Assembly: GCF_006345805.1 (NCBI RefSeq)
Contig: NC_043019.1
Coordinates: forward strand, 2,356,001-2,420,000
Direction: 5' to 3'
Source of the DNA: Octopus sinensis
Taxonomy: Eukaryota
DNA length: 64,000 nt
Shown: positions 5,458 through 56,050 of the stretch, piece by piece
How the letters are laid out: each line of letters opens with the position of its first letter
Numbering within the stretch: the first letter of the stretch is position 1
Made by a program: the position numbers and the translations under genes
Notes under the pieces: model-generated
What the model saw: the letters and a program-made list of their open reading frames with translations, nothing else
Database searches by the model: none
What the model was told of the DNA's origin: nothing

Positions 5458-6104
5458 TTCTTTGATAATCGTTCTAGAGTTAGGTGACGTCAGCAACTTG
5501 TGTTTGTAAAATTTCATTAGTCTAGAGTTAGGTGACGTCAGCATCTGGTGTTTGTATGGTGTTATTGTATGGTGATTTAGAGTTGCGGTTTCGAAACCCA
5601 CGTGGAAGATTAAAGTTTTTTTTAATTATATCTCTTGTATCTGGTTGTTTACTGTAGAGAAAGACTGTCAGTATGGTTTTTTGAATTATGTCTTTTGTAA
5701 CTGGTTGATTTCTTTTGTGGTGTATTATTAAAATTTAGTTACGTAGGCGCTGATGTCGATATCCATATCATTGCCTGCAACTGCTGAAGTATTTCTTTCT
5801 TAGATATTTATATGTTTGGTGACTGACGCTTTTTTAATTGTTTACAGTTTACCAGAAATTCAAACCAATTTTCAATTTTCTGCTATTGTTAGAAAAATAA
5901 AATAACAACATCCATTATTTATTTTTCTCTTCAAAATTCTTTTCTCAAATTTATGTTTTCAAACACAGAATGCAAACTCTCAAGCACATACATACACACA
6001 AATATGCATATAAATACGCGGGCAAGAGTTTTCCTGCAATAGCGGTAGGTCGACCAAAACCTTGACAGAGGATTTTGCAGACAGAAACCAAAAGACATCC
6101 GTCG

Positions 6105-6215
<111 letters not shown>

Positions 6216-6224
6216 AAGTTAATC

Positions 6225-6420
6225 CAAACATGAAAACACAAAGAGAAAACCCAACAATGCGAGGACGTGGAACAAGTATAATGTTATTGGATGCTCAGGA
6301 AAGGAAAGAAAGAATGAGGATTTAACGTTTCGAGCGGAGCTCTTCGTCAGAACATAGAAAAAGGAAAGATCCAAAGAAAGGAAGACGGAGGGAAAAAAAT
6401 CGCCAACGGTAGAAACGCGG
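6225..6420 (-). mobile_element. Short Penelope-pLTR-like repeat carrying a hammerhead-like motif
   Basis: Minus strand CTGACGA-A-GAGC-TCC-GCTC-GAAAC-GTT at 6350-6324; second copy at 39545-39735. Confidence 0.65.
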
Positions 6421-6461
6421 TCATATATTTATATTATATATATATATATATATATATATTA

Positions 6462-6498
<37 letters not shown>

Positions 6499-6559
6499 AC
6501 ATATATATATATATAATATATATATATATATTTGTGTGTATGTATGTATGTATGTATGT

Positions 6560-7580
6560 GGCGTGGTCTGATTGATAAGTATCCGGACTGTTGCTATCCT
6601 AATGAAGCTAAAGTATGGAAAATAAGGCTGCTTAGCACAGATCGATCTTCAGCTCTGCTTTTGCTAAGTTTTAATGTTCTTGCTCACATCCGTTGTTTAC
6701 AGCAGTGCTTGGAATGAAAATCATCGCATGGACCATGACAGAGAAAGTTGATCAGAGAATCTACATCAAATTTTGCCAAAAGCTTGGCGGTACATGCTCA
6801 GAGGCCTACGCAAAGTTTTCAAAGTTTTCATCATTCTCAACACAATCAAGCATATCTTGTCACCATCATCATTGTTCGACCGTGGCCGAGACAATGGAAT
6901 TTACCATGCTACGCCAGACTTCACGGTCCATCATAGCATTACGGAGGTCCTATTGCTGGATGCCTGTATCCTGGAGATTACAGGGATACAGGCATCCAGC
7001 AGATCTTGTACAACTGAAACCCAAGTGTCATTCTGGTCAGCTGAAAGCAGTTTTGACACAAACTTGGCAGACACGCGTCTAATACCCAAATCTTCAGTGA
7101 TAATGATCTGAACTGAACCGTAACTAATCTGCACATCCTCTGATAACACACATATGGTGATGCAACGATTTTCTCTCACAGCTGCACGCACATCTGCGAT
7201 GTTGTTTCAGTTCTGCTGGTTGCGGGTCTCCTAGAGCGTTCGTCAATATCAATATTTTTTCAGTCATGTTGGAAACGTCTGAACCACACTTGAATGCGGC
7301 TCATACACTCCTCATTCACTTTTTGTAACTTTGTGTAGTCCTCTGATCAGGTATCGCCATGACAACTTTCTCTGCCATGGTGAATACGACGATCACACGC
7401 TATACACGTTCCTTCTAAGCACTGCTGTAGACAGCAGAAGTGAGCTAGAACGTTAAAACTTAATGCGCATGCACAGCAGAGGTCATGGTCAAGGTCAATA
7501 TGTGCCAAGCATCTTCACTCTGCGTGCTTTAGTGCCGTTACTATGGCGACAGTCCGGATACTTATTGATCAGACCTCGTA
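6560..7580. mobile_element. Non-autonomous mariner made of two inverted 5' halves, interrupted by an RTE fragment
   Basis: TIRs GGTCTGAT(T/C)(G/A)ATAAGTATCCGGACTGT at both ends; the transposase N-terminus M(T/A)EKV is read inward from both ends. Confidence 0.8.
6860..7000 (-). mobile_element. 5'-truncated RTE LINE insertion, same family as 5084-5457
   Basis: Near-identical to 5090-5200; flanked by an approximately 11-bp TSD-like GCA(T/G)ATCTTGT. Confidence 0.8.
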
Positions 7581-8489
7581 TAAATATTTGTGTGTGAGAG
7601 AGAGAGAGAAAGTATTTCTTTATTCACCATAAGGTTGAGAAAAAGAGGGGACAATACAGGGACTGATAAAACAAAAACGTTGGGGTCATGGTATCGAATG
7701 AGACGAAACTTATGAATAAACAAACAATAAAAAATATACAATTAAATGAGAATGAGTGATTAACAAAAAATGAAGCGGAGGACGCGGTTGACCCCACAAA
7801 CCATATACTCACACTGAAGACTTTGAGAGGGCAGGCAGACAGACAGAGAACAAATAGTGAGGGTTTATCAAGCCGGGCAAAATACTTCATAAGCTCTCTG
7901 TTGGCACACCAGGCTAACTCAGTTCTCCTTAAATTAATTAGACTGTGGCCAGCTGGGTCACCGCCTTGAAGAATTTTTAGTCGAATGTATACATATATAC
8001 GAAAGGCTTCTGTCAGTTTCCGTCTACCATATCCACTCACAAGGCTTTGGTGTCCCGAAGCTATAGCGGAAAACTCTTGCCCAAGGTATCACAGTGGCAT
8101 TGAACCCGGAACCATATACTTGGAATCAATATTCTCACCACACATTCCAGAAATAATTTCCCCTTTCTTTGAAAAAGCAAACAATTGCCACTGGATTTTG
8201 ACTTTCTTTCTCCAGCTAAGTGGCAAAACTTCTGCTTCATTTGTATTTTTGCGTATGTCATCTGTATATAACCACCCCTTCCTGATTTCTTTTACTTCAC
8301 GCCATTGACTCACTTGACTTGTTTCATTTAGCTTAATTTTATGTGTGTGTGTGTGTGTATGCGTGTGTGTATGCGTGTGCATGCGTGCGTGTGTATACAT
8401 ACGTACATGCATACAGACATGCATACATACATGAATACATACATATATATACATACATAACGCTCTAACAACTCTTAAGTACTTCCTAG

Positions 8490-9070
8490 ACTGTCGCCCC
8501 TAACTGTACCTAGCACTGCAACATTCCTCTGTTTAACCGAGCTCGTCTCAAATCTTAATTGCTTTCCTTTCTCTGGGGAATTTTGCAAACAACTCAGCAG
8601 GGTCGCTATGGGAATTAGGATGGGCTCCAATTATGCAAACCTCTTTGTCTGCCACGTTAAAGAGCAAATCTTTCCCCAGTTCACCGGTCGCATCCAAAAT
8701 CTGTAAGGTTATTTATATTGAATACCCCGTCAGTTCTACCACCCTCACCACACAAGAGCTCAGTAGTTTTATTTCTTTCGATAACACCTTTCACCCGAAC
8801 ATGAAATTCACCACCATCGTGTCCTATACACCTTCATCCACTACAAGCCTACGAACTTCCACTCCTGTCTCTAATACTCTTCCTCTCACAAGCACTACAT
8901 TTGCCATATCATTCTCTCAAATTCTTCACCTTCTTCAGCTCTGCAGCATTGATTCGAATTTAGAATCTCAACGTCTAAGAATGCAACAATATTTCCTGAA
9001 TCAGTTGTGAACGTTGCACTTCGATGGACCCAACACATCGACCACGATACCGCTTTCCTACCAACTTTGT
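8490..9070 (+). mobile_element. Penelope-like element RT relic
   Basis: LTELVSNLNCFPFSGEFCKQLSRVAMGIRMGSNYANLFV resembles the PLE RT motif GVAMGxxxGPSYANLF; downstream SQxLHLLQLCS resembles PLE thumb; stops and frameshifts. Confidence 0.75.
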
Positions 9071-9149
9071 GCACCCCTACAAATCTGTATCTTGATTATT
9101 TGTCTGTCTCTTTATGCATGTATTAATCTCTCTTTATCCCTGTCTTTCT

Positions 9150-9345
9150 GTCTATCTGGACGGGGTGCCCACGAAGATTTTGATGAGCCTGGCTATCAAC
9201 ACCCGAACAGAATTTGAAATCAGAATGCAAAGATCCAGTACAGATACTGAACTACATGTCATACAATCCTCTAAAAGCAAACCCATCATTCAACTGCCCA
9301 GTAACAAAACTTTGTTTATCAACCCAAATAGAAGAAAGGCAAATT
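9150..9345 (+). mobile_element. Possible Tx1/L1 ORF1 relic
   Basis: LDGVPTKI...FEIRMQRSSTDTELHVIQ...IQLPSNKTLFI loosely aligns to the ORF1 relic at 30250-31155. Confidence 0.35.
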
Positions 9346-9659
9346 GAAGCTTGGTGGCATTTGGACTTATAGTCAGACATCAAGAACGAATACCGCATAG
9401 TATTTTTTCGCCACAAATTTATTCAAAGGTCAAATTTGTATTTCACTCATAATTTCGGAATTGCCCCTTATCCTCAGGCTCACTATCACACTTTAGATCT
9501 TCTCATTACCTTGCCACACTATAGCCCCTCTTGCAACCACACTATACACTCATGCACTATTACATCGTAGACCCTTCTACAAACAAATTCTCTACATCCT
9601 CTCATTGAGTTAATTTGTTTCAATGTATCAATGTGGGTGTCCTATTATTTATTATTTGT

Positions 9660-48483: not shown

Positions 48484-49998
48484 CCTCTCTTCGCCGCGTG
48501 TCCCCCTCCTCCTTCCTTCTTCCTTTCCTTGCCTATAAAACAAAATTCCTTTACACGTGGTTACCACTATTGAAAAGACTGCCTCACGCGCTGCTACTAC
48601 ACTTTCGTCCTTGCCAGCAAAAAGGCTTCTTCGTTCGTCCCCTTGTGTGGTTAATTTCCTGTATAGTATTCTTGTTATTTTCTCGTTTTGTAACTAATTG
48701 TACTTTTTGTACATGTATTTTTATTTTTGCAGTTTTATTGTTTGTCTATGCCAGAAAAAAGGCTTTTTCGTTCGTCCTCTTGTGTTTGTTTTTGTACATG
48801 TATTTTAATTTTGCAGTCTTATTGTTACGTCTTGTTTGTGTTCGTACTCATTGTGCCCCGCTGCTTGAAATTTTATTTTATTCTCTCGCGGAAGGCCTAT
48901 TGGATAGTGTTCTGTTATGCCTTCGAAACATGCCTGACTCCTCTAGCGAAGCTGATGACGGGGGTTTTGTCATTGTGTAACCTGTCCGTATTTGGTTTTC
49001 GTTTTCCGTTTTCTTGTTTTTTGTTTTTTGGCTTTTTCTGTTTCTACGTCTTATGTGATGTCCTGTACTTCCGTATAATTATTTATATATGCATGATGTA
49101 TATACATGTAGATGTAGGTACGTACATATATGTTTGTATGTATGCATATATTTTATTTATCTCCTTATTGTCTGACAGCGCCCCGCATCAGGTTCGTTCC
49201 GATTCGTCGTTTCGATCCACTTCTTGGTCCCCTTTTTTTATATTAATATTATTATATTGAAGATGCGGTACTCTCTCTCCCTTTGCTTTAACCTCTTCAA
49301 TCTTTCTCCCTCCCCCTCCTCCTCTCTTCGCCGCGTGTCCCCCTCCTCCTTCCCTCTTCCTTGCCTATAAAACAAAATTCCTTTACACGTGTTACCACTA
49401 TTGAAAAGACTGCCTCCACGCGCTGCTACTACTACACTTTCGTCTTGCCAGCAAAAAGGCTTCTTCGTTCGTCCCCTGTGGTGGTTATTTCCTGTATAGT
49501 ATTCTTGTTATTTTCTCGTTTTGTAACTAATTGTACTTTTTGTACATGTATTTTTATTTTTGCAGTTTTATTGTTTGTCTATGCCAGAAAAAAGGCTTTT
49601 TCGTTCGTCCTCTTGTGTTTGTTTTTGTACATGTATTTTAATTTTGCAGTCTTATTGTTACGTCTTGTTTGTGTTCGTACTCATTGTGCCCCGCTGCTTG
49701 AAATTTTATTTTTTAATCTCTCGCAGGAAGGCCTATTGGATTAGTGTTCTGTTATGCCTTCGAAACATGCCTGACTCCTCTAGCGACAGCTGATGACGGG
49801 GGTTTGTCCTTGTGTAACCTGTCCTGTATTTGGTTTTCGTTTTCCGTTTTCTTGTTTTTTGTTTTTTGGCTTTTTCTTTTCTACGTCTTATTGTGATGTC
49901 CTGTACTTCCGATAATTATTTATATATGCATGTATATATACATGTAGATGTAGGTACGTACATATATGTTTGTATGTATGCATATATTTTTATTATCT
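48482..49998. repeat. Tandem duplication, about 840-bp period, pLTR-like unit
   Basis: 48482-49165 repeats at 49320-49998; decayed GAAGGC...GCCTTC-GAAAC motif in each copy. Confidence 0.85.
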
Positions 49999-50052: not shown

Positions 50053-50239
50053 ATTATATATATATATATATATATATGTGTATACAGTTGTATATATATA
50101 TATGTATACAGTTATTATATATATATATATTATTATATGGTTATATATTGTATATATAATATACAGTTATATATATATATATACACTTCCGGCTTTCGTA
50201 GAGTAAACACGTGTGGTCTCGCTCCGCTTCTTTCTCTCC

Positions 50240-50766
50240 GCTCTCTTTCTCTATTACCCCCCTACCCCCCCTATTGCACTATTGGATTAATATAACTTAA
50301 TATAATTAGATAGATAGATAGATAGACAACATATCTCTCCTCTTCCTCTTCTCTCTTGCTCTCTTCTCTTGGCTCCCAATCTCTCCTTAAGTACATAGAC
50401 GCTCTCTTTCTCTATTACCCCCCTACTATTGGATTAATATAACTTAACATAATTAGATAGATAGATAATATATCTTCCTCTTCTCTCTTGCTCTCTTCTC
50501 TTGGCTCCCAATCTCTCCTTAAGTGCATGGACGCTCTCTTTCTCTATTACCCCCCTACCCCCCTATTGCACTATTAGATTAATATAACTTAATATAATTA
50601 GATAGATAGATAGATAGACAACATATCTCTCCTCTTCCTCTTCTCTCTTGCTCTCTTCTCTTGGCTCCCAATCTCTCCTTAGGTACATAGACGCTCTCTT
50701 TCTCTATTACCCCCCTACTATTGGATTAATATAACTTAACATAATTAGATAGATAGATAATATATC
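50240..50766 (+). repeat. Higher-order tandem repeat in the LINE 5' UTR (161/132/160/74-bp units)
   Basis: Units start GCTCTCTTTCTCTATTACCCCC at 50240, 50401, 50533 and 50693. Confidence 0.9.
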
Positions 50767-50770
50767 AAGA

Positions 50771-51567
50771 ATGTCCAGAGCTTGGAAACGTGATGAACTG
50801 GCGTGGTTCCTGCGAGGATGGCAATGTGCTGACGGAGAAAGTCCAAGTAACATAATTGCGGCAGCACTAAGGAACAAAGGATTCAAAAGGACGCCAGCAC
50901 AAATAGAGCGGAAGAGGCAAGAGTTCGTACGCTCATACGCACTTGTCAGATCGCACATAAACACACTGGATGCCATTTTTAACAGCGAAAAACGCGAACA
51001 AAGTAAAGATGGCAAGGATGGAGACGCGGGCGCAGATAAGGAGGGTCACCCCCACCTGGTGGACGCCCAGGAAGAAAACTCCAGCGAGAGGCCTGCCCGG
51101 GAGGTGAACCCAGGTACGGATGCTCCTACCGGCACCAAACCATGGACATGGCGATGAAGAGGCCAAAAAAAGAGGAAAAAACTGAAGCTAAAACTCAGAC
51201 AGCCAAGGGGCAAGGCAGCCAGGGATAGAGGCAAACCTAACTGTCCATATGCCAAAAAGGATGGAAACAAGCGCAGCGCACACGGTATGTATGTTCTACC
51301 TGAGAGGTGCCTGCCGGCATGGAGAGGAAGGTGCAGGCTGCCGCTTTGCACATCCGGGACCCTGCCACAGAAACCAACCACCGAAAGGAAATGGGATGGA
51401 CCACGCATCACCGGCCCCAAAACGGAGGTACGCAGATGTGTGTGCGTACCACAAACCACCAACGTGTTGTTGAAAGGGCAGCTGCTGAGCAGGAATCTTT
51501 TTTGTGCATGGCACAAAAGATTGTACAGCAGCTAACCTGGCTCCATCAGGCTCAGGCTCGCAGATGA
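50771..51567 (+). CDS. LINE ORF1 (frameshifted): Myb/SANT-like N-terminus and CCCH-type zinc finger
   Basis: MSRAWKRDELAWFLRGW...IAAALRNKGFKRTPAQIERKRQEFVRSY; VCMFYLRGACRHGEEGAGCRFAHP; domain calls are by-eye pattern recognition. Confidence 0.65.
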
Positions 51568-51647
51568 ACTGCCCACAGTTCACAAGACCGCCACAGCAGA
51601 TGGACCCAGGGTGACACCACCGGCAACAGCATATACACCTCACCTCG

Positions 51648-54590
51648 ATGCTCCTACTGAACATCAGAGGACTACTAACACACAGTAACAGGACAAAAGT
51701 CCCGTTCCTGAGAGATTTGTCGCATGCAATCAAGCCTTATGCATAGCACTCACAGAAACGCATCTGAAACCGGACATAGCAGATGCGGAATTACACATAC
51801 CACAGTATGTTGTACTACGGACCGACAGGAAAGAAAGAAGTCATGGAGGAGTTGCTATGTACATCCGTGGGGACCTCACACCCCAGGTCCTTTTGTCATA
51901 TTCAAACTCGGTGTGTGACACACTGATTGTACACATAAGGCAACTTGATGTAGTGTGTGTGTGGCTACATATCGCCCTCCAGATGCCCCAAGTCATATGG
52001 GCAAGTTTGAGGACTGCCTTTTAAAAATAGAAGAAGTTCTAACCACATTAGAACAACACATAAGTGTACTTCTCATGGGAGACTTCAATCTACCGAATGT
52101 CAGATGGCCCGAGGGCCTTTCTCTCCCAGGAATGACAAGATGTGAACGAGGACAGGCGAGGTCCCTCCTGAACCTCACCAACACCCTGTACATGGAGCAA
52201 GTAATACTCCAACCAACCAGAGCGGGTAACACACTGGATCTCTGTTTCACAAAATATGGATCTCATCCATAATGTGAAAGTGACACCGACACTACTCTCG
52301 GATCACAACATGGTAGAGCTGACCATGTACGGGCCAAAAGAGCACGGACATGCAGCCTACAAGAAACCCTCAGAGTCTTTCTAGCTTGAACTTCAATAAG
52401 GCAAACTGGAAACAAATTGAGAAAGAGATCCTCAAACAAAACTGGCCTGAATGTCTCTCCTCGCCGGACATCGACATGATACTTCAACAATTCATGTCTG
52501 TAATGCAAGCCATATGCTACAAATGTGTCCCAGAGAGAAAGGCCACTGTACAAGAACAAATCCCAGAGAGAGAAAAATTTTAATGAGACGGCGCACAAAA
52601 ATCTCAAATCGCCTAAACAAACAAATTGAAAGCAGTGAAAAGTCCCGCCTGAAAATAAAACTGTTGGAAATTGAAAATGGTCTGCAACTCTCCCATGAGA
52701 AGGAAGAGCAGACAAAGAAGCCTGGGCTATAGACAACATAAAAACTAACCCAGAGCTTTCTACAGGTATGCCAAAGAAACAGCTACGGTGCACTGTAGGA
52801 TAGGGCCACTCCTTGAAAAGGATGGCACACTCACAGGAAAACCAATGAGGGTAAGTGAATACTGAATGAACAATTCAAGAGTGTTTCACTCCACCCCTTG
52901 GGCTTTTCCAAATCAGCAATCCAACTGACATTTTTACCACTGCAGATATAGAATCAGAGGCGGCGACGTTAAATTACATCGATATAAAGGAAGATGATGT
53001 AATAAAGGCTATAGATGAAATGAAAATAGACTCAGCTATTGGCCCCGATGGATTCCCGTCAATCCTCTTAAAAGTATGTAAGAGAGTCTTAGCAAGACCA
53101 CTGCAGTTCCTCTTTCAGAGCTTCCTTGCAGCTGGCAAACTTCCAAGAAAACTGAAGGAAGGTAAAATATGCCCTATTCATAAAGGAGGTGCAGAGCGAA
53201 GCCAAGAACTACAGACCTATCTCTCTGACCTCACACATCAGCAAGGTCATGGAACGAATAGTCAGAAGGAAACTAATCACCTTCCTTGAAGAAAATGACT
53301 TGCTGCCTGACACCCAACATGGTTTCCGACCAGGAAGAAGCTGCTTAACTCAGCTCCTGCAGCACTATGACTGGGTGCTGAAACAACTGCTCAACCACTC
53401 AAATGTGGAAGTCATATATCTCGACTTCGCAAAGGCCTTCGATAAAGTCGATCATGGAATGATATGTCACAAACTGCGTGATCTTGGCATAGTTGGAAAA
53501 CTAGGAGAATGGCTTCACGACTTTCTGAAGAAATAGAAGTCAGGTGGTAGTAGCCAATGGGGCCACTTCCATTAGCACGCAAATAGTGAGCGGTGTTCCA
53601 AGGGCACTGTTTTGGGACCACTACTGTTCATAATGGCCCTCTCAGACATGCCCTCAGCCACGCGGAGAGCCACGATCACAAGTTATGCAGATGATACAAA
53701 AGTTTCACAGGTAATACAGAACCCTGAAGACACTAGGCACCTGCAATATGAGCTGGACGAAATTTACAAGTGGGCTGAAAAGAATAGCATGCAGTTCAAT
53801 GCTGAAAAGTTTCAAGCTTTATACTATCAGCATGCAAACTGAATGCAATACCCAAGGAATACACTGGACCCGGAGGGATTGCAATCCCAGAGGCACAATC
53901 AGTGCGTGACCTGGGTATTCACAGAGTGATGACGCGACCTTTCATGTACATGTTGCTAAACTGACAGTGAAATGCAGACGCCTGGCTGGATGGATTCTTA
54001 GAACCTTTAGAACAAGAGAACAGGAAACCATGATGGTCCTCTGGAAGACACTTGTCCTAAGTCACTTTGACTATTGCTCTCAGCTATGGTCACCATCCAG
54101 TGTCAAGTTGATCACAGAACTTGAGGCGATCCAACGAAGCTACACGAAGATAGCCTCTATGCAGAATGTAAGCTACTGGGAAAGACTCAAGAGATTAAAA
54201 TTATATTCCCTGGAGCGTAGGCGGGAAAGATATGCCATAATATACATCTGGAAGATCCTGGACGGAAGCGTCCTGAACTTTGGCATCGAGAGTTACGCAA
54301 ACGCCAGAACTGGGCGCCACTGCGTGGTGCCTAGGACTCCAAACTTGCCATCAAGATGTAGGACAAGATTCTGTGATAGCCTGGGCTTCCGAGGCCCACA
54401 GCTCTTCAATATCCTCCCGATGAACTGAGAGACCTACATGAGGTGGATGCAGATGTTCTTTAAAATGGAGCTGGATCTCTTCCTGTCAGGTGTCCCAGAT
54501 GAACCAACTTCACGGCAGGAGGGGCAGATGAGGGCAGCTGCATCGAACTCTCTCATGCACCAAATAGCAGTTGCTAGAAAGCCTCCATGA
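51648..54590 (+). CDS. LINE ORF2 (APE endonuclease + reverse transcriptase), multiple frameshifts
   Basis: LNIRGL, LTETHL, RTDRKERSHGGVA, LMGDFN, LDLCF, SDH; YRPISLTS, QHGFR, YLDFAKAFDKVDH, GPLLF, YADDTK. Confidence 0.95.
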
Positions 54591-55339
54591 AGTGAAACCA
54601 AGTAGCAACACAAATGGCGGTGCCCCAGCATGGCCACAGCTCATGAGCTGAAACTGGAATCAATCAATCAATCAATCAATCAATCATATATATACCTTCT
54701 TTCTACTATACGCACAAGGCCTGTAATTTTGGGGAAGATGGCTAATTGATTATATCGACCCCGGTGTTTAACGGATGCTTATTTTATCGAACTCGAAAAG
54801 ATGAAAGGCAAAGTCAGAAGGGGTGAAATTTGGACTCATAGCATAAAGACGAACGAAATGCGACTAAGCATTTTGTCCGGCGTGTCACCGAGTCAGCCAG
54901 CTCACCGCCTTGTTATTTGCTAAAATAGGAAGTATGACTTCAAATTTTGATACAAGGCCAGCAATTTCGGACTCCAGTACACAACTGGTACTTATTTTTA
55001 TCGATCCCAAAAGGAGAAAAGGCAAAGTCAGCCTCGGTGGAATTTGAATTAAGAACGCAAATACGAACAAAATGCTGCTAAGCATTTTGCCCGGCATGCC
55101 ATCGAATCTACCGACTCGCCGCCTTGCTATGAATATAGATATTAATAGTAAAACCAGTAATATTAGTAGTTGTACTTTCTAGTGTATTTTGACGGTATAT
55201 TCTGGTATGTATATTGGTCTATATTTGACCACTATGCATTAAACTTTAGGCTTGGTTTCGTGTAACAGCGCGGGAGATAACTTACTACATAGCTATTAGA
55301 TAATTCGTGAAACATTGTGTGTGTATGCATATACATACA

Positions 55340-55342
55340 TAC

Positions 55343-55430
<88 letters not shown>

Positions 55431-55448
55431 GGATGGATGGATGGATAT

Positions 55449-55524
<76 letters not shown>

Positions 55525-55554
55525 AGATGGAGGATAGATATATAATATATATAT

Positions 55555-55625
<71 letters not shown>

Positions 55626-55633
55626 TAGAGATG

Positions 55634-55712
<79 letters not shown>
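55340..55712. repeat. (GATA)n microsatellite
   Basis: Direct reading; may be the expanded tail of the adjacent minus-strand CR1 relic. Confidence 0.95.
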
Positions 55713-55714
<2 letters not shown>

Positions 55715-56050
55715 CTTAGACTGGCTTCGGTCATTATTGGCCCATGACATGACCAACACAATAGCACCACATAGAAAAGTCTTTTAGTTGATTATTTCGG
55801 GACACCATGGACCGCTCAAGCAGAAAGTTGTTGTTGGTTTAGAGGTACCCAGGTGTTGGTGGTTTATCCGGTATATCCTGGAGGAATTTGTCCTGCTACC
55901 CTTTGAAAGTTGTGGGGTCTTTTTCTACTTTAATTTCTTTCGGCATAACATTGAAAAGAGCAGGACCATTTGCAATGAAGAAATTGTTGTCGCAATGTTC
56001 TTATATGATGTGATCTCGACCTTTGTAGGGGACGCATTGCACGAGGGGGT
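55715..56050 (-). mobile_element. CR1-like LINE 3' relic
   Basis: NFFIANGPALFNVMPKEI...FLQDIPDKPPTPGY parallels the C-terminus of the LINE at 54360-54590. Confidence 0.6.

What the first reader, a model, noticed from the sequence alone, without database searches (positions are those of the whole stretch)
50771..51567. LINE ORF1 with a Myb/SANT-like (trihelix) domain plus a CCCH zinc finger
Seen: ORF1 begins W-x4-E-x3-FLxGW...IAAALRNKGFKRTxxQIERKRQEFVRSY, the spacing of trihelix Myb/SANT-like DNA-binding domains. After a charged linker and frameshifts comes C-x7-C-x7-C-x3-H. Established: CR1/L2-group ORF1s usually carry PHD, RRM, zinc-knuckle or esterase modules, and I recall CCCH fingers in some invertebrate CR1s. 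Inference: a Myb/SANT-like module would be an unusual acquisition that could give DNA targeting or autoregulation at the repeated 5' UTR. I cannot confirm novelty.
Basis: partly seen in the sequence, partly recalled or inferred. Interest (0 to 1): 0.75.

Follow-up and report, generated by a model that had tools for sequence, protein, structure and literature searches.

The report
Octopus LINE ORF1 with Myb-like domain
This is the broken first gene of a dead jumping element (a LINE) in an octopus genome, and its family, apparently confined to octopods, has replaced the usual front module of that gene with a Myb/SANT-like putative DNA-binding domain, a combination I found in no published survey.

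Summary
Window 50185-54685 is one full-length but dead CR1-group LINE. It has a 10-bp target-site duplication, a repeated 5' UTR, ORF1, an APE+RT ORF2 and an (ATCA)n tail.

ORF1 (50771-51567) is split over three reading frames. Its three conserved blocks are:
- an N-terminal ~72-aa helical domain
- one C-x7-C-x8-C-x3-H finger
- a C-terminal helix

All three blocks recur upstream of ORF2 in diverged copies from Octopus sinensis, O. vulgaris and Argonauta hians. The Argonauta copy is intact (ORF1 291 aa, ORF2 1021 aa).

The N-terminal domain is Myb/SANT-like of the trihelix type:
- Pfam Myb_DNA-bind_4 is hit by 7 of 23 family members, and one passes the gathering score.
- hhalign against a bona fide 4x Myb_DNA-bind_4 protein gives 96% probability.
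- The AlphaFold model (domain pLDDT 88-97) has plant GT-1 as its best geometric match in the PDB, but the Foldseek E-value (0.57) is not significant.

The three nearest non-octopod LINEs examined carry a PHD finger plus three CCCH fingers instead. So the Myb-like module most likely replaced a PHD in the octopod lineage.

DNA or chromatin tethering is inferred, not shown. Searched surveys of ORF1 types do not mention this architecture; Repbase and Dfam could not be checked. I rate it a new variant of a known kind, of moderate interest.

The parts
50175..50184 (.). 5' copy of the target-site duplication ATATATATAC, at the end of a (TA)n microsatellite
   Evidence: It is the longest exact match between the two flanks. 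The TA repeat spans 50116-50183.
50185..54685 (+). Full-length, degenerate CR1-group LINE (about 4.5 kb)
   Evidence: Bounded by the target-site duplication. Carries APE and RT domains. Positions 51700-54695 are 94% identical to an O. vulgaris copy, L007 10962-13970.
50185..50770 (+). 5' UTR, mostly tandem repeats: 292-bp unit x1.8, itself built of ~132-bp sub-repeats, spanning 50239-50766
   Evidence: Self-BLAST gives 98.7% identity between 50239-50474 and 50532-50766. Tandem Repeats Finder confirms the array.
50771..50986 (+). ORF1 N-terminal Myb/SANT-like (trihelix-type) domain, residues 1-72, intact in frame 1
   Evidence: Pfam Myb_DNA-bind_4 E=0.002. AlphaFold helices at residues 7-19, 25-35, 42-60 and 63-77, with block-mean pLDDT 88-97 over residues 1-80. 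Foldseek GT-1 match, 2jmw, probability 0.93. hhalign 96% to Myb_DNA-bind_4 repeats. All the family's conserved residues (L33, R40, Q44, R47, K48, Y56) are present.
50987..51287 (+). Charged, low-complexity ORF1 linker, holding the stop at 51155-51157 and the frameshifts
   Evidence: The three-frame translation and tblastn with intact relatives put the blocks in different frames. AlphaFold confidence is low here.
51288..51353 (+). Single CCCH zinc finger, C-x7-C-x8-C-x3-H, in frame 2
   Evidence: Read directly from the sequence. Weak Pfam zf-CCCH hits. 53-71% identical to the fingers of P0143, L001 and P0147. The three Cys are kept in all seven aligned ORF1s; the His in six, since L005 has Gln.
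51469..51567 (+). ORF1 C-terminal conserved helix (AAEQESFLCMAQKIVQQLTWLH) in frame 3, ending at a TGA that is probably premature
   Evidence: 72% identical to P0129 residues 299-327. The equivalent region of P0121 is a confident long helix, residues 236-275. Homology to P0143 continues past the stop.
51725..54587 (+). ORF2 (APE endonuclease plus reverse transcriptase plus C-terminal region), broken by many frameshifts and stops
   Evidence: Pfam Exo_endo_phos_2 in 51955-52272 and RVT_1 in 53189-53536 and 53612-53842. tblastn with Argonauta ORF2 needs at least 7 frame changes, and the HSPs contain stops.
54588..54685 (+). 3' UTR with a conserved GGCGGTGCCCCAGCATGGCCACAGC...GCTGAAAC box, followed by the (ATCA)n tail at about 54659-54685
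   Evidence: Sequence read. The same box, followed by family-specific short tandem repeats, is seen in L001, L002, L006 and L007.
54686..54695 (.). 3' copy of the target-site duplication ATATATATAC

Best explanation
SHOWN
- The feature is the decayed ORF1 of a full-length CR1-group LINE flanked by a target-site duplication, in an Octopus genome (O. vulgaris or O. sinensis).
- In this LINE lineage ORF1p has four parts: (i) an N-terminal ~70-aa Myb/SANT-like domain of the trihelix / Myb_DNA-bind_4 type; (ii) a disordered charged linker; (iii) one non-canonical CCCH zinc finger; (iv) a C-terminal long helix.
- All named members of the lineage come from octopods: Octopus sinensis, O. vulgaris and Argonauta hians.
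- Parts (iii) and (iv) are shared with the three nearest non-octopod LINEs I examined.
- Those relatives carry a PHD finger and two further CCCH fingers where the octopod elements carry the Myb-like domain. The most economical history is therefore a module swap, PHD to Myb/SANT-like, at the base of the octopod lineage.

INFERRED
- ORF1p binds the element's RNA through the CCCH finger and the basic linker, and multimerises through the C-terminal helix. This would be the same job that the coiled coil plus RRM does in L1 ORF1p.
- The Myb/SANT-like domain contacts double-stranded DNA or chromatin and so tethers the RNP to the genome for target-primed reverse transcription. That is the role proposed for the PHD finger it replaced.
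- Whether binding is sequence-specific is unknown.

The window copy itself is dead, because both ORFs are broken.
For: Architecture and conservation:
- Searches show the three blocks in the window.
- The same blocks are present in L001 (intact, Argonauta), L006 (O. sinensis) and L007 (O. vulgaris), and in the full-length proteins P0121, P0129, P0143 and P0147.
- RT nucleotide identity between these LINE families is only 66-73%. The domain is therefore kept across long divergence.

Myb/SANT assignment:
- Pfam: (P0138 scores 29.3 bits against a cut-off of 27).
- The family profile finds P0146 at E=7e-4 in 1.84 billion proteins.
- P0146 is a 4x Myb_DNA-bind_4 protein (1e-40).
- All four of its repeats align in register.
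- hhalign gives probability 96% and E=4.8e-9 over 55 columns.
- The AlphaFold model is confident, with mean pLDDT 81 and domain pLDDT 88-97.
- Foldseek: GT-1 trihelix 2jmw, probability 0.93, TM 0.54, rmsd 2.9 A over 65 columns. It ranks third by E-value, but it is the longest low-rmsd alignment; the two hits above it have rmsd above 11 A.

Module swap:
- L004, L005 and L009 ORF1s show a C4HC3 PHD pattern plus three CCCH fingers plus a homologous C-terminal helix.

LINE identity:
-.

Modularity of ORF1 and the proposed targeting role of PHD:
- Metcalfe & Casane 2014, PMC4120745.
Against: - The window ORF itself scores below Pfam's gathering threshold (18.9 against 27 bits).
- Foldseek E-values are not significant (0.57).
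- Profile searches against PDB sequences found no Myb or SANT protein.
- The CCCH finger has a non-canonical middle spacing (x8), is below every Pfam cut-off, and is modelled with low confidence.
- No binding data exist.
- SANT-type relatives of this fold bind histone tails or other proteins rather than DNA.
- The direction of the swap rests on three outgroup loci of unknown organism and on no formal phylogeny.
- CR1-group placement rests on architecture and the 3' tail, not on an RT tree with reference elements.
Confidence: 0.75

Rival explanations
1. The N-terminal domain has the Myb/SANT fold but works as a SANT-type protein or histone-interaction module, or as an ORF1p-ORF2p or host-factor adaptor. 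It would not bind DNA.
For: SANT domains share the fold and bind histone tails (established knowledge). The module sits where sister LINEs carry a PHD finger, which is a histone reader (PMC4120745). There is no evidence of a shared DNA motif in the 5' UTRs of the different families.
Against: The best profile and structural matches are to the DNA-binding trihelix / Myb_DNA-bind_4 branch. The third helix is strongly basic and nearly invariant (R40, Q44, R47, K48), as expected of a recognition helix.
Confidence: 0.25
2. The Myb-like domain binds the element's own repeated 5' UTR, either as DNA or as RNA. That would give autoregulation of the internal promoter or recognition of the element's own transcript in cis.
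For: Every family examined has a repetitive 5' UTR immediately upstream of ORF1. PIF/Harbinger Myb-like proteins bind subterminal repeats of their own element (PMC4055405). The window's repeats contain TGGATTAATAT three times, which from memory is one base off the plant GT-1 Box II core.
Against: The 5' UTR repeats of the four families share no recognisable motif. L006 and L007 are CT-rich and L001 has unrelated ~100-bp repeats, and GGATTAA is absent from all three. Meanwhile the putative recognition helix is nearly invariant. Tandem 5' repeats are common in LINEs that have no such domain (PMC13343379).
Confidence: 0.12
3. The resemblance to Myb/SANT is convergent. On this view the N-terminal region is simply a lineage-specific helical bundle, for example for oligomerisation, with no evolutionary link to Myb_DNA-bind_4.
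For: The window ORF and most family members are below Pfam's cut-off. Foldseek E-values are above 0.5. PDB profile searches were negative. Small helical bundles match one another easily.
Against: Independent lines agree on the same family and the same register: one member is above the gathering score; there is a profile hit to a bona fide Myb_DNA-bind_4 protein among 1.84 billion proteins; hhalign gives 96%; and GT-1 is the best geometric match, at probability 0.93.
Confidence: 0.1
4. The ORF at 50771 is a host gene or exon that merely lies next to a 5'-truncated LINE, and is not part of the element.
For: NCBI and ENA gene models annotate similar ORFs as stand-alone 'uncharacterized proteins'.
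Against: The ORF lies inside the target-site duplication. It is followed by the CCCH block, the helix block and ORF2 in the same order in four loci from three species. The annotated O. sinensis protein P0122 itself lies in such a LINE, L006.
Confidence: 0.02

Closest known systems
CR1/L2-group LINEs with a PHD-type ORF1 (type III of Khazina & Weichenrieder; CR1 subgroups 4 and 6 of Metcalfe & Casane 2014), including the unnamed relatives L004, L005 and L009
   Same: The ORF2 has the same layout (APE plus RT, 48-51% identical). The 3' end carries short tandem repeats. The ORF1 C-terminal half is homologous: the first CCCH finger has the same x7/x8/x3 spacing, and a helix follows it.
   Different: The PHD finger and CCCH fingers 2-3 are absent. 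A Myb/SANT-like domain occupies the N-terminus instead.
Trihelix / Myb_DNA-bind_4 domains (Pfam PF13837; Arabidopsis GT-1, PDB 2jmw)
   Same: The helix spacing and the signature W..E...L..W ... G[FY].R[ST]..Q...K...L...Y are shared. There are profile and fold matches.
   Different: The match is very divergent (about 20% identity), and most members are below Pfam's cut-off. The domain is encoded by a retrotransposon ORF1 rather than by a cellular transcription factor. DNA binding has not been shown.
Myb domains of site-specific LINEs (the R2 N-terminal zinc finger plus Myb; the TRAS/SART Myb-like region)
   Same: A LINE-encoded Myb-fold module could contact target DNA during target-primed reverse transcription (R2: PMC12503042; TRAS from my own knowledge).
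   Different: In those elements the Myb domain is part of the RT-bearing protein. In R2 it accompanies a restriction-like endonuclease and strict site specificity. Here it lies in a separate ORF1 protein of an APE-type element with dispersed copies.
Myb-like (ORF1) protein of PIF/Harbinger DNA transposons (Ping/Pong, Harbinger3_DR)
   Same: A transposable element puts a Myb/SANT-like DNA-binding module on a separate protein from the catalytic one (PMC4055405).
   Different: Those are class II DDE transposons in which the Myb protein recruits the transposase to the subterminal repeats. There is no CCCH finger and no RNA intermediate. This is an analogy only.
L1 ORF1p (coiled coil plus RRM plus CTD)
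   Same: It is the first ORF of a bicistronic LINE, and it combines a presumed multimerising helix with a nucleic-acid-binding module.
   Different: No RRM, CTD or Transposase_22 similarity was detected by Pfam. The helix is C-terminal and its oligomeric state is unknown.

Membership tests
Myb_DNA-bind_4 / trihelix (Pfam PF13837) | The window ORF itself scores at or above Pfam's gathering score (27 bits) | tested here: not met
   It scores 18.9 bits, E=0.002, over residues 28-62.
Myb_DNA-bind_4 / trihelix (Pfam PF13837) | The protein family to which the window ORF belongs reaches the model | tested here: met
   P0138 scores 29.3 bits, E=1.2e-6, over profile positions 3-71 of 89. Seven of 23 members hit at E<0.1. 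hhalign to the Myb_DNA-bind_4 repeats of P0146 gives 96%.
Myb_DNA-bind_4 / trihelix (Pfam PF13837) | Three-helix Myb/SANT-type bundle | tested here: inconclusive
   AlphaFold gives confident helices at 7-19, 25-35 and 42-60, plus 63-77. GT-1 (2jmw) is the best geometric match, with probability 0.93, TM 0.54 and rmsd 2.9 A, but Foldseek E=0.57.
Myb_DNA-bind_4 / trihelix (Pfam PF13837) | Binds double-stranded DNA | not testable with these tools
   This needs EMSA, SELEX or DAP-seq with recombinant domain.
CCCH zinc finger (Pfam zf-CCCH and relatives) | Three Cys and one His in conserved order across homologues | tested here: met
   The three Cys align in all seven ORF1s compared. The His is present in six, and L005 has Gln there.
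CCCH zinc finger (Pfam zf-CCCH and relatives) | Canonical spacing C-x7/8-C-x4/5-C-x3-H and a score above the Pfam cut-off | tested here: not met
   The spacing is x7-x8-x3. The best Pfam score for the window is 16.8 bits against a cut-off of 20.5. The best score in the family is 20.2 against 27, for zf-CCCH_PARP12.
CR1-group (CR1/L2) LINE | ORF2 with an N-terminal APE endonuclease and an RT | tested here: met
   Pfam Exo_endo_phos_2 and RVT_1. The intact Argonauta relative has a 1021-aa ORF2.
CR1-group (CR1/L2) LINE | 3' end with a conserved box and short tandem repeats instead of poly(A) | tested here: met
   The window ends in (ATCA)n. Relatives end in (ATACAAG)n, (ATTTAAGG)2 and (ACATTAAA)n after the same conserved box. 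That CR1-group elements other than Zenon lack poly(A) is taken from PMC13343379.
CR1-group (CR1/L2) LINE | RT phylogeny places it inside the group, and in a named clade | not tested
   No Repbase or Dfam reference set is available here, and the database hits carry no clade names.
Published ORF1 types I-IV (RRM+CCHC; coiled coil+RRM+CTD; PHD; esterase) | Presence of the type's diagnostic domain | tested here: not met
   No RRM, CCHC knuckle, Transposase_22, PHD or esterase hit in the window ORF1 pieces, nor in the L001 ORF1 (98% identical to P0121), P0129 or P0147. By that scheme it is type V, 'unclassified' (PMC4120745).
R2-type or PIF/Harbinger-type Myb modules | The Myb domain is fused to an RLE-type RT protein (R2), or is encoded beside a DDE transposase (Harbinger) | tested here: not met
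   The element has an APE-type ORF2 and no DDE transposase. The Myb-like domain lies in a separate ORF1.

The most novel reading that the evidence does not exclude
In this octopod LINE lineage, target choice has been moved to ORF1p. The trihelix domain would read a specific DNA sequence and steer the RNP there, making this an APE-type, two-ORF LINE whose ORF1 protein provides sequence-specific DNA targeting. That would be the retrotransposon counterpart of the Harbinger Myb-like protein. The sequence read could be TA-type microsatellites, where the window copy sits and next to which the O. vulgaris and O. sinensis copies end. Alternatively it could be the element's own 5' monomers.
Probability: 0.15. 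Interest if true: 0.75.

Novelty: new variant of a known kind. Interest (0 to 1): 0.5.

Why it matters
ORF1 proteins are the least understood part of LINE biology. Published classifications of the CR1/L2/Jockey superfamily list RRM, CCHC, coiled coil/CTD, PHD and esterase modules.

A conserved lineage in which a Myb/SANT-like domain sits where its relatives carry a PHD finger adds a new module to that list. Because the swap puts one chromatin- or DNA-facing module in place of another, it supports the idea that the N-terminus of these ORF1 proteins contacts the genome rather than the RNA.

It also gives a tractable test case: an intact copy exists in Argonauta. The question it can address is whether an ORF1 protein can contribute to target choice.

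On the practical side, several 'uncharacterized proteins' and a chimeric LPIN3 gene model in octopus annotations are pieces of this ORF1.

Tried and rejected
- The word-indexed protein search with the window ORF found nothing. With the Argonauta ORF1 it found only a 98%-identical twin. Only the exhaustive profile search recovered the family.
- Profile searches against PDB sequences, using the full-length and the N-terminal-only alignments, gave only chance-level hits such as Gfh1 and ribosomal S8.
- Foldseek on the full-length P0121 model (mean pLDDT 60.7) gave nothing usable apart from GT-1 at rank 2 with E=2.1. I repeated it with the better domain model.
- A self-comparison of the window found no second copy of the element.
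- L002 and L003 carry no ORF1 homologue upstream. They are 5'-truncated or rearranged: P0003 is an RT with an internal triplication. L008 has no recognisable ORF1.
- I looked for a shared motif in the 5' UTRs of the four families and found none.
- I considered the ATGA stop/start overlap at 51564-51567 as an ORF1/ORF2 coupling signal. I rejected it for the window because homology to other ORF1s continues past that stop. The overlap is real in the intact Argonauta copy.
- Literature searches for Myb, SANT or CCCH in LINE ORF1s returned nothing relevant. Khazina & Weichenrieder 2009 is not held in the library.
- I did not build a consensus to repair the frameshifts. It was unnecessary because intact relatives exist.

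Full report
**What is in the window**

The interval 50771-51567 lies inside a single 4.5-kb non-LTR retrotransposon.
- The element runs from 50185 to 54685 on the + strand.
- It is flanked by a 10-bp target-site duplication, ATATATATAC, at 50175-50184 and 54686-54695.
- It sits in a (TA)n microsatellite.
- Its 5' UTR (50185-50770) is mostly a tandem array: a 292-bp unit x1.8, built of ~132-bp sub-repeats.
- ORF2 homology runs from 51725 to 54587.
- ORF2 has Pfam Exo_endo_phos_2 and RVT_1 hits, but it needs at least seven frame changes and contains stops.
- The 3' end has a conserved box followed by (ATCA)n rather than poly(A).
- No other copy lies in the window.

**The observation**

Three ORF1 blocks can be recognised by comparison with intact relatives, and they lie in three different frames:
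- the N-terminal domain in frame 1 (50771-50986)
- the zinc finger CMFYLRGACRHGEEGAGCRFAH in frame 2 (51288-51353)
- the helix AAEQESFLCMAQKIVQQLTWLH in frame 3 (51469-51555), ending at a TGA at 51565-51567

There are two small corrections. The first motif is W-x3-E, and the finger spacing is C-x7-C-x8-C-x3-H.

**Host and relatives**

- A stitched ORF2 query finds its best named hit in Argonauta hians, at 63% identity.
- Window 51700-54695 is 94% identical at the DNA level to a copy in Octopus vulgaris chromosome OX597814.1 (L007).
- An O. sinensis gene model carries a tail that matches the window's ORF1 linker at about 73% identity.
- The window is therefore from an Octopus of the vulgaris/sinensis group.

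The Argonauta locus L001 holds an intact element. ORF1 is at 5529-6404 (291 aa) and ORF2 at 6314-9379 (1021 aa). All three ORF1 blocks are present.

Two further, more distant families have the same blocks in the same order upstream of ORF2, although both copies are frameshifted:
- L006, in O. sinensis, is 73% identical to the window in ORF2 DNA.
- L007 copy 1, in O. vulgaris, is 69% identical.

An exhaustive profile search of 1.84 billion representative proteins found 27 hits at E<=1e-3. Nearly all are ORF1 fragments or full-length ORF1s (P0121, P0129, P0143, P0147). Of the ten I looked up, five carry a source name, and all five are from O. sinensis or O. vulgaris. The family is real, conserved and, as far as these data show, octopod-specific.

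**Is the N-terminal domain Myb/SANT-like?**

Several independent lines agree.
- Pfam Myb_DNA-bind_4 is the only family hit by the window ORF, at E=0.002 and 18.9 bits, below the cut-off of 27. The 24%-identical Argonauta ORF1 hits it independently (E=0.0015).
- Seven of 23 family members hit it. P0138 passes the gathering score, with 29.3 bits covering profile positions 3-71 of 89.
- The ORF1 profile pulled out P0146. Pfam shows P0146 to be a fourfold Myb_DNA-bind_4 protein (1e-40).
- A local HMM aligns all four of P0146's repeats in the expected register.
- hhalign gives 96% probability and E=4.8e-9 over 55 columns spanning the three helices.
- AlphaFold2 with the 23-sequence alignment models the window ORF with pLDDT 88-97 over residues 1-80. 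The helices are at 7-19, 25-35, 42-60 and 63-77.
- In Foldseek against the PDB, the longest low-rmsd alignment is the trihelix DNA-binding domain of Arabidopsis GT-1. The figures for 2jmw are probability 0.93, TM 0.54 and rmsd 2.9 A over 65 columns.

Caveats:
- The Foldseek E-value is 0.57, which is not significant.
- Profile searches against PDB sequences found nothing relevant.
- The nearly invariant residues L33, R40, Q44, R47, K48 and Y56 fall in helices 2-3. This is the G[FY]xR[ST]xxQxxxKxxxLxxxY signature of this domain class.

I conclude that the fold assignment is well supported for the family. DNA binding is not shown.

**The rest of ORF1, and the module swap**

I examined three of the closest non-octopod LINEs. 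They are L009, L004 and L005, at 48-51% ORF2 identity, and they come from metagenome assemblies of unknown organism. Each of their ORF1s has:
- a C4HC3 PHD-type finger
- three CCCH fingers
- a C-terminal helix

Their first finger has exactly the octopod x7/x8/x3 spacing. The 'YA[DE]A ... FLE..Q.I' helix region also aligns. So the CCCH-to-C-terminus half is ancestral.

The octopod lineage lacks the PHD finger and fingers 2-3, and carries the Myb-like domain instead. The donor of that domain is not identifiable: the nearest non-LINE relative, P0146, is remote.

**Mechanism (inferred)**

By analogy with other ORF1 proteins:
- The CCCH finger and basic linker would bind the element's RNA.
- The long C-terminal helix would multimerise. 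In P0121 it spans residues 236-275 with pLDDT of about 90.
- The N-terminal module would face DNA or chromatin.

[quoted passage not shown] Replacement of a PHD by a Myb/SANT-like domain at the same position fits a genome-tethering role.

Precedents for element-encoded Myb modules that contact DNA are:
- the R2 N-terminal domain (PMC12503042)
- the separate Myb-like protein of PIF/Harbinger transposons (PMC4055405)

The 5' UTR repeats of the four families share no motif, while the putative recognition helix is nearly invariant. A SANT-like, non-DNA-binding role remains a serious alternative.

**Comparison with what is known, and novelty**

- The element meets the architectural features of CR1-group LINEs: APE plus RT, a target-site duplication, and a short-tandem-repeat tail. 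I could not run an RT phylogeny with reference elements.
- Its ORF1 fits none of the published types I-IV and would be 'type V, unclassified'.
- The main ORF1 survey, a 2026 survey of vertebrate CR1-group elements, and gastropod, bivalve and octopus TE papers mention no Myb/SANT or CCCH ORF1.
- Targeted literature searches found none either.
- Repbase and Dfam could not be checked.

I rate this a new variant of a known kind, namely modular LINE ORF1 evolution. It is of moderate interest. It would be of higher interest if the domain proves to direct integration.

Noticed in passing
window 50116-50184 and 54686-54700; L007 13950-14400; L006 11920-12000: The window copy is inserted in a (TA)n microsatellite, with target-site duplication ATATATATAC. 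The O. vulgaris and O. sinensis copies also end next to TA-rich repeats, whereas the two Argonauta copies do not. About 5.8% of the window lies within 5 bp of a (TA)>=4 run, so this is only a weak hint of TA-repeat targeting.
   Followed up: partly
P0128 (O. sinensis XP_036355764.1, 'LPIN3, partial'); window 50984-51198: This gene model joins a genuine Lipin_N domain to a C-terminal tail that is about 73% identical to the window's ORF1 linker. It is either a chimeric annotation or an exonised LINE fragment.
   Followed up: partly
P0122, P0123, P0126, P0143 (XP_036366487.1, CAI9735850.1, CAI9729350.1, CAI9715314.1): Octopus 'uncharacterized' or 'hypothetical' proteins in NCBI and UniProt are fragments of this LINE ORF1. 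P0122 lies in a decayed full-length element, L006.
   Followed up: yes
L001 6401-6404: In the intact Argonauta element the ORF1 stop TGA overlaps an in-frame ORF2 ATG, giving ATGA. This is the arrangement expected for termination-reinitiation coupling. The similar ATGA at window 51564-51567 is probably a premature stop.
   Followed up: partly
window 50283-50293, 50430-50440, 50722-50732: The 5' UTR repeats contain TGGATTAATAT three times. From memory, this is one base off the plant GT-1 Box II core (GGTTAATAT). The motif is absent from the 5' UTRs of L001, L006 and L007, so it is a curiosity and not evidence.
   Followed up: partly
window 48498-48980 and 49361-49744: Two mechanical ORFs share a long identical peptide (…SCIVFLLFSRFVTNCTFCTCIFIFAVLLFVYARKKAFSFVLLCLFLYMYFNFAVLLLRLVCVRTHCAPLLEILF…). 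This indicates a direct repeat spaced about 860 bp apart, just upstream of the LINE.
   Followed up: no
window 55232-55770: A long tetranucleotide microsatellite, read as LSIYLSIY… on the minus strand, lies downstream of the element. The window as a whole is rich in simple repeats: 4% of its bases lie in (TA)n runs of at least 10 bp.
   Followed up: no
L003 5977-8331: The database protein P0003 is a reverse transcriptase with its central part repeated three times. This is a tandem triplication or an assembly artefact in an unrelated LINE copy.
   Followed up: no
L001 9400-9445, L002 8310-8370, L006 11860-11890, L007 13900-13945, window 54605-54655: All the families share a conserved 3' UTR box (GGCGGTGCCCCAGCATGGCCNCAGC…GCTGAAAC) just before their family-specific tandem-repeat tails. 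It is a likely recognition site for the reverse transcriptase. I did not fold it or test it for covariation.
   Followed up: no
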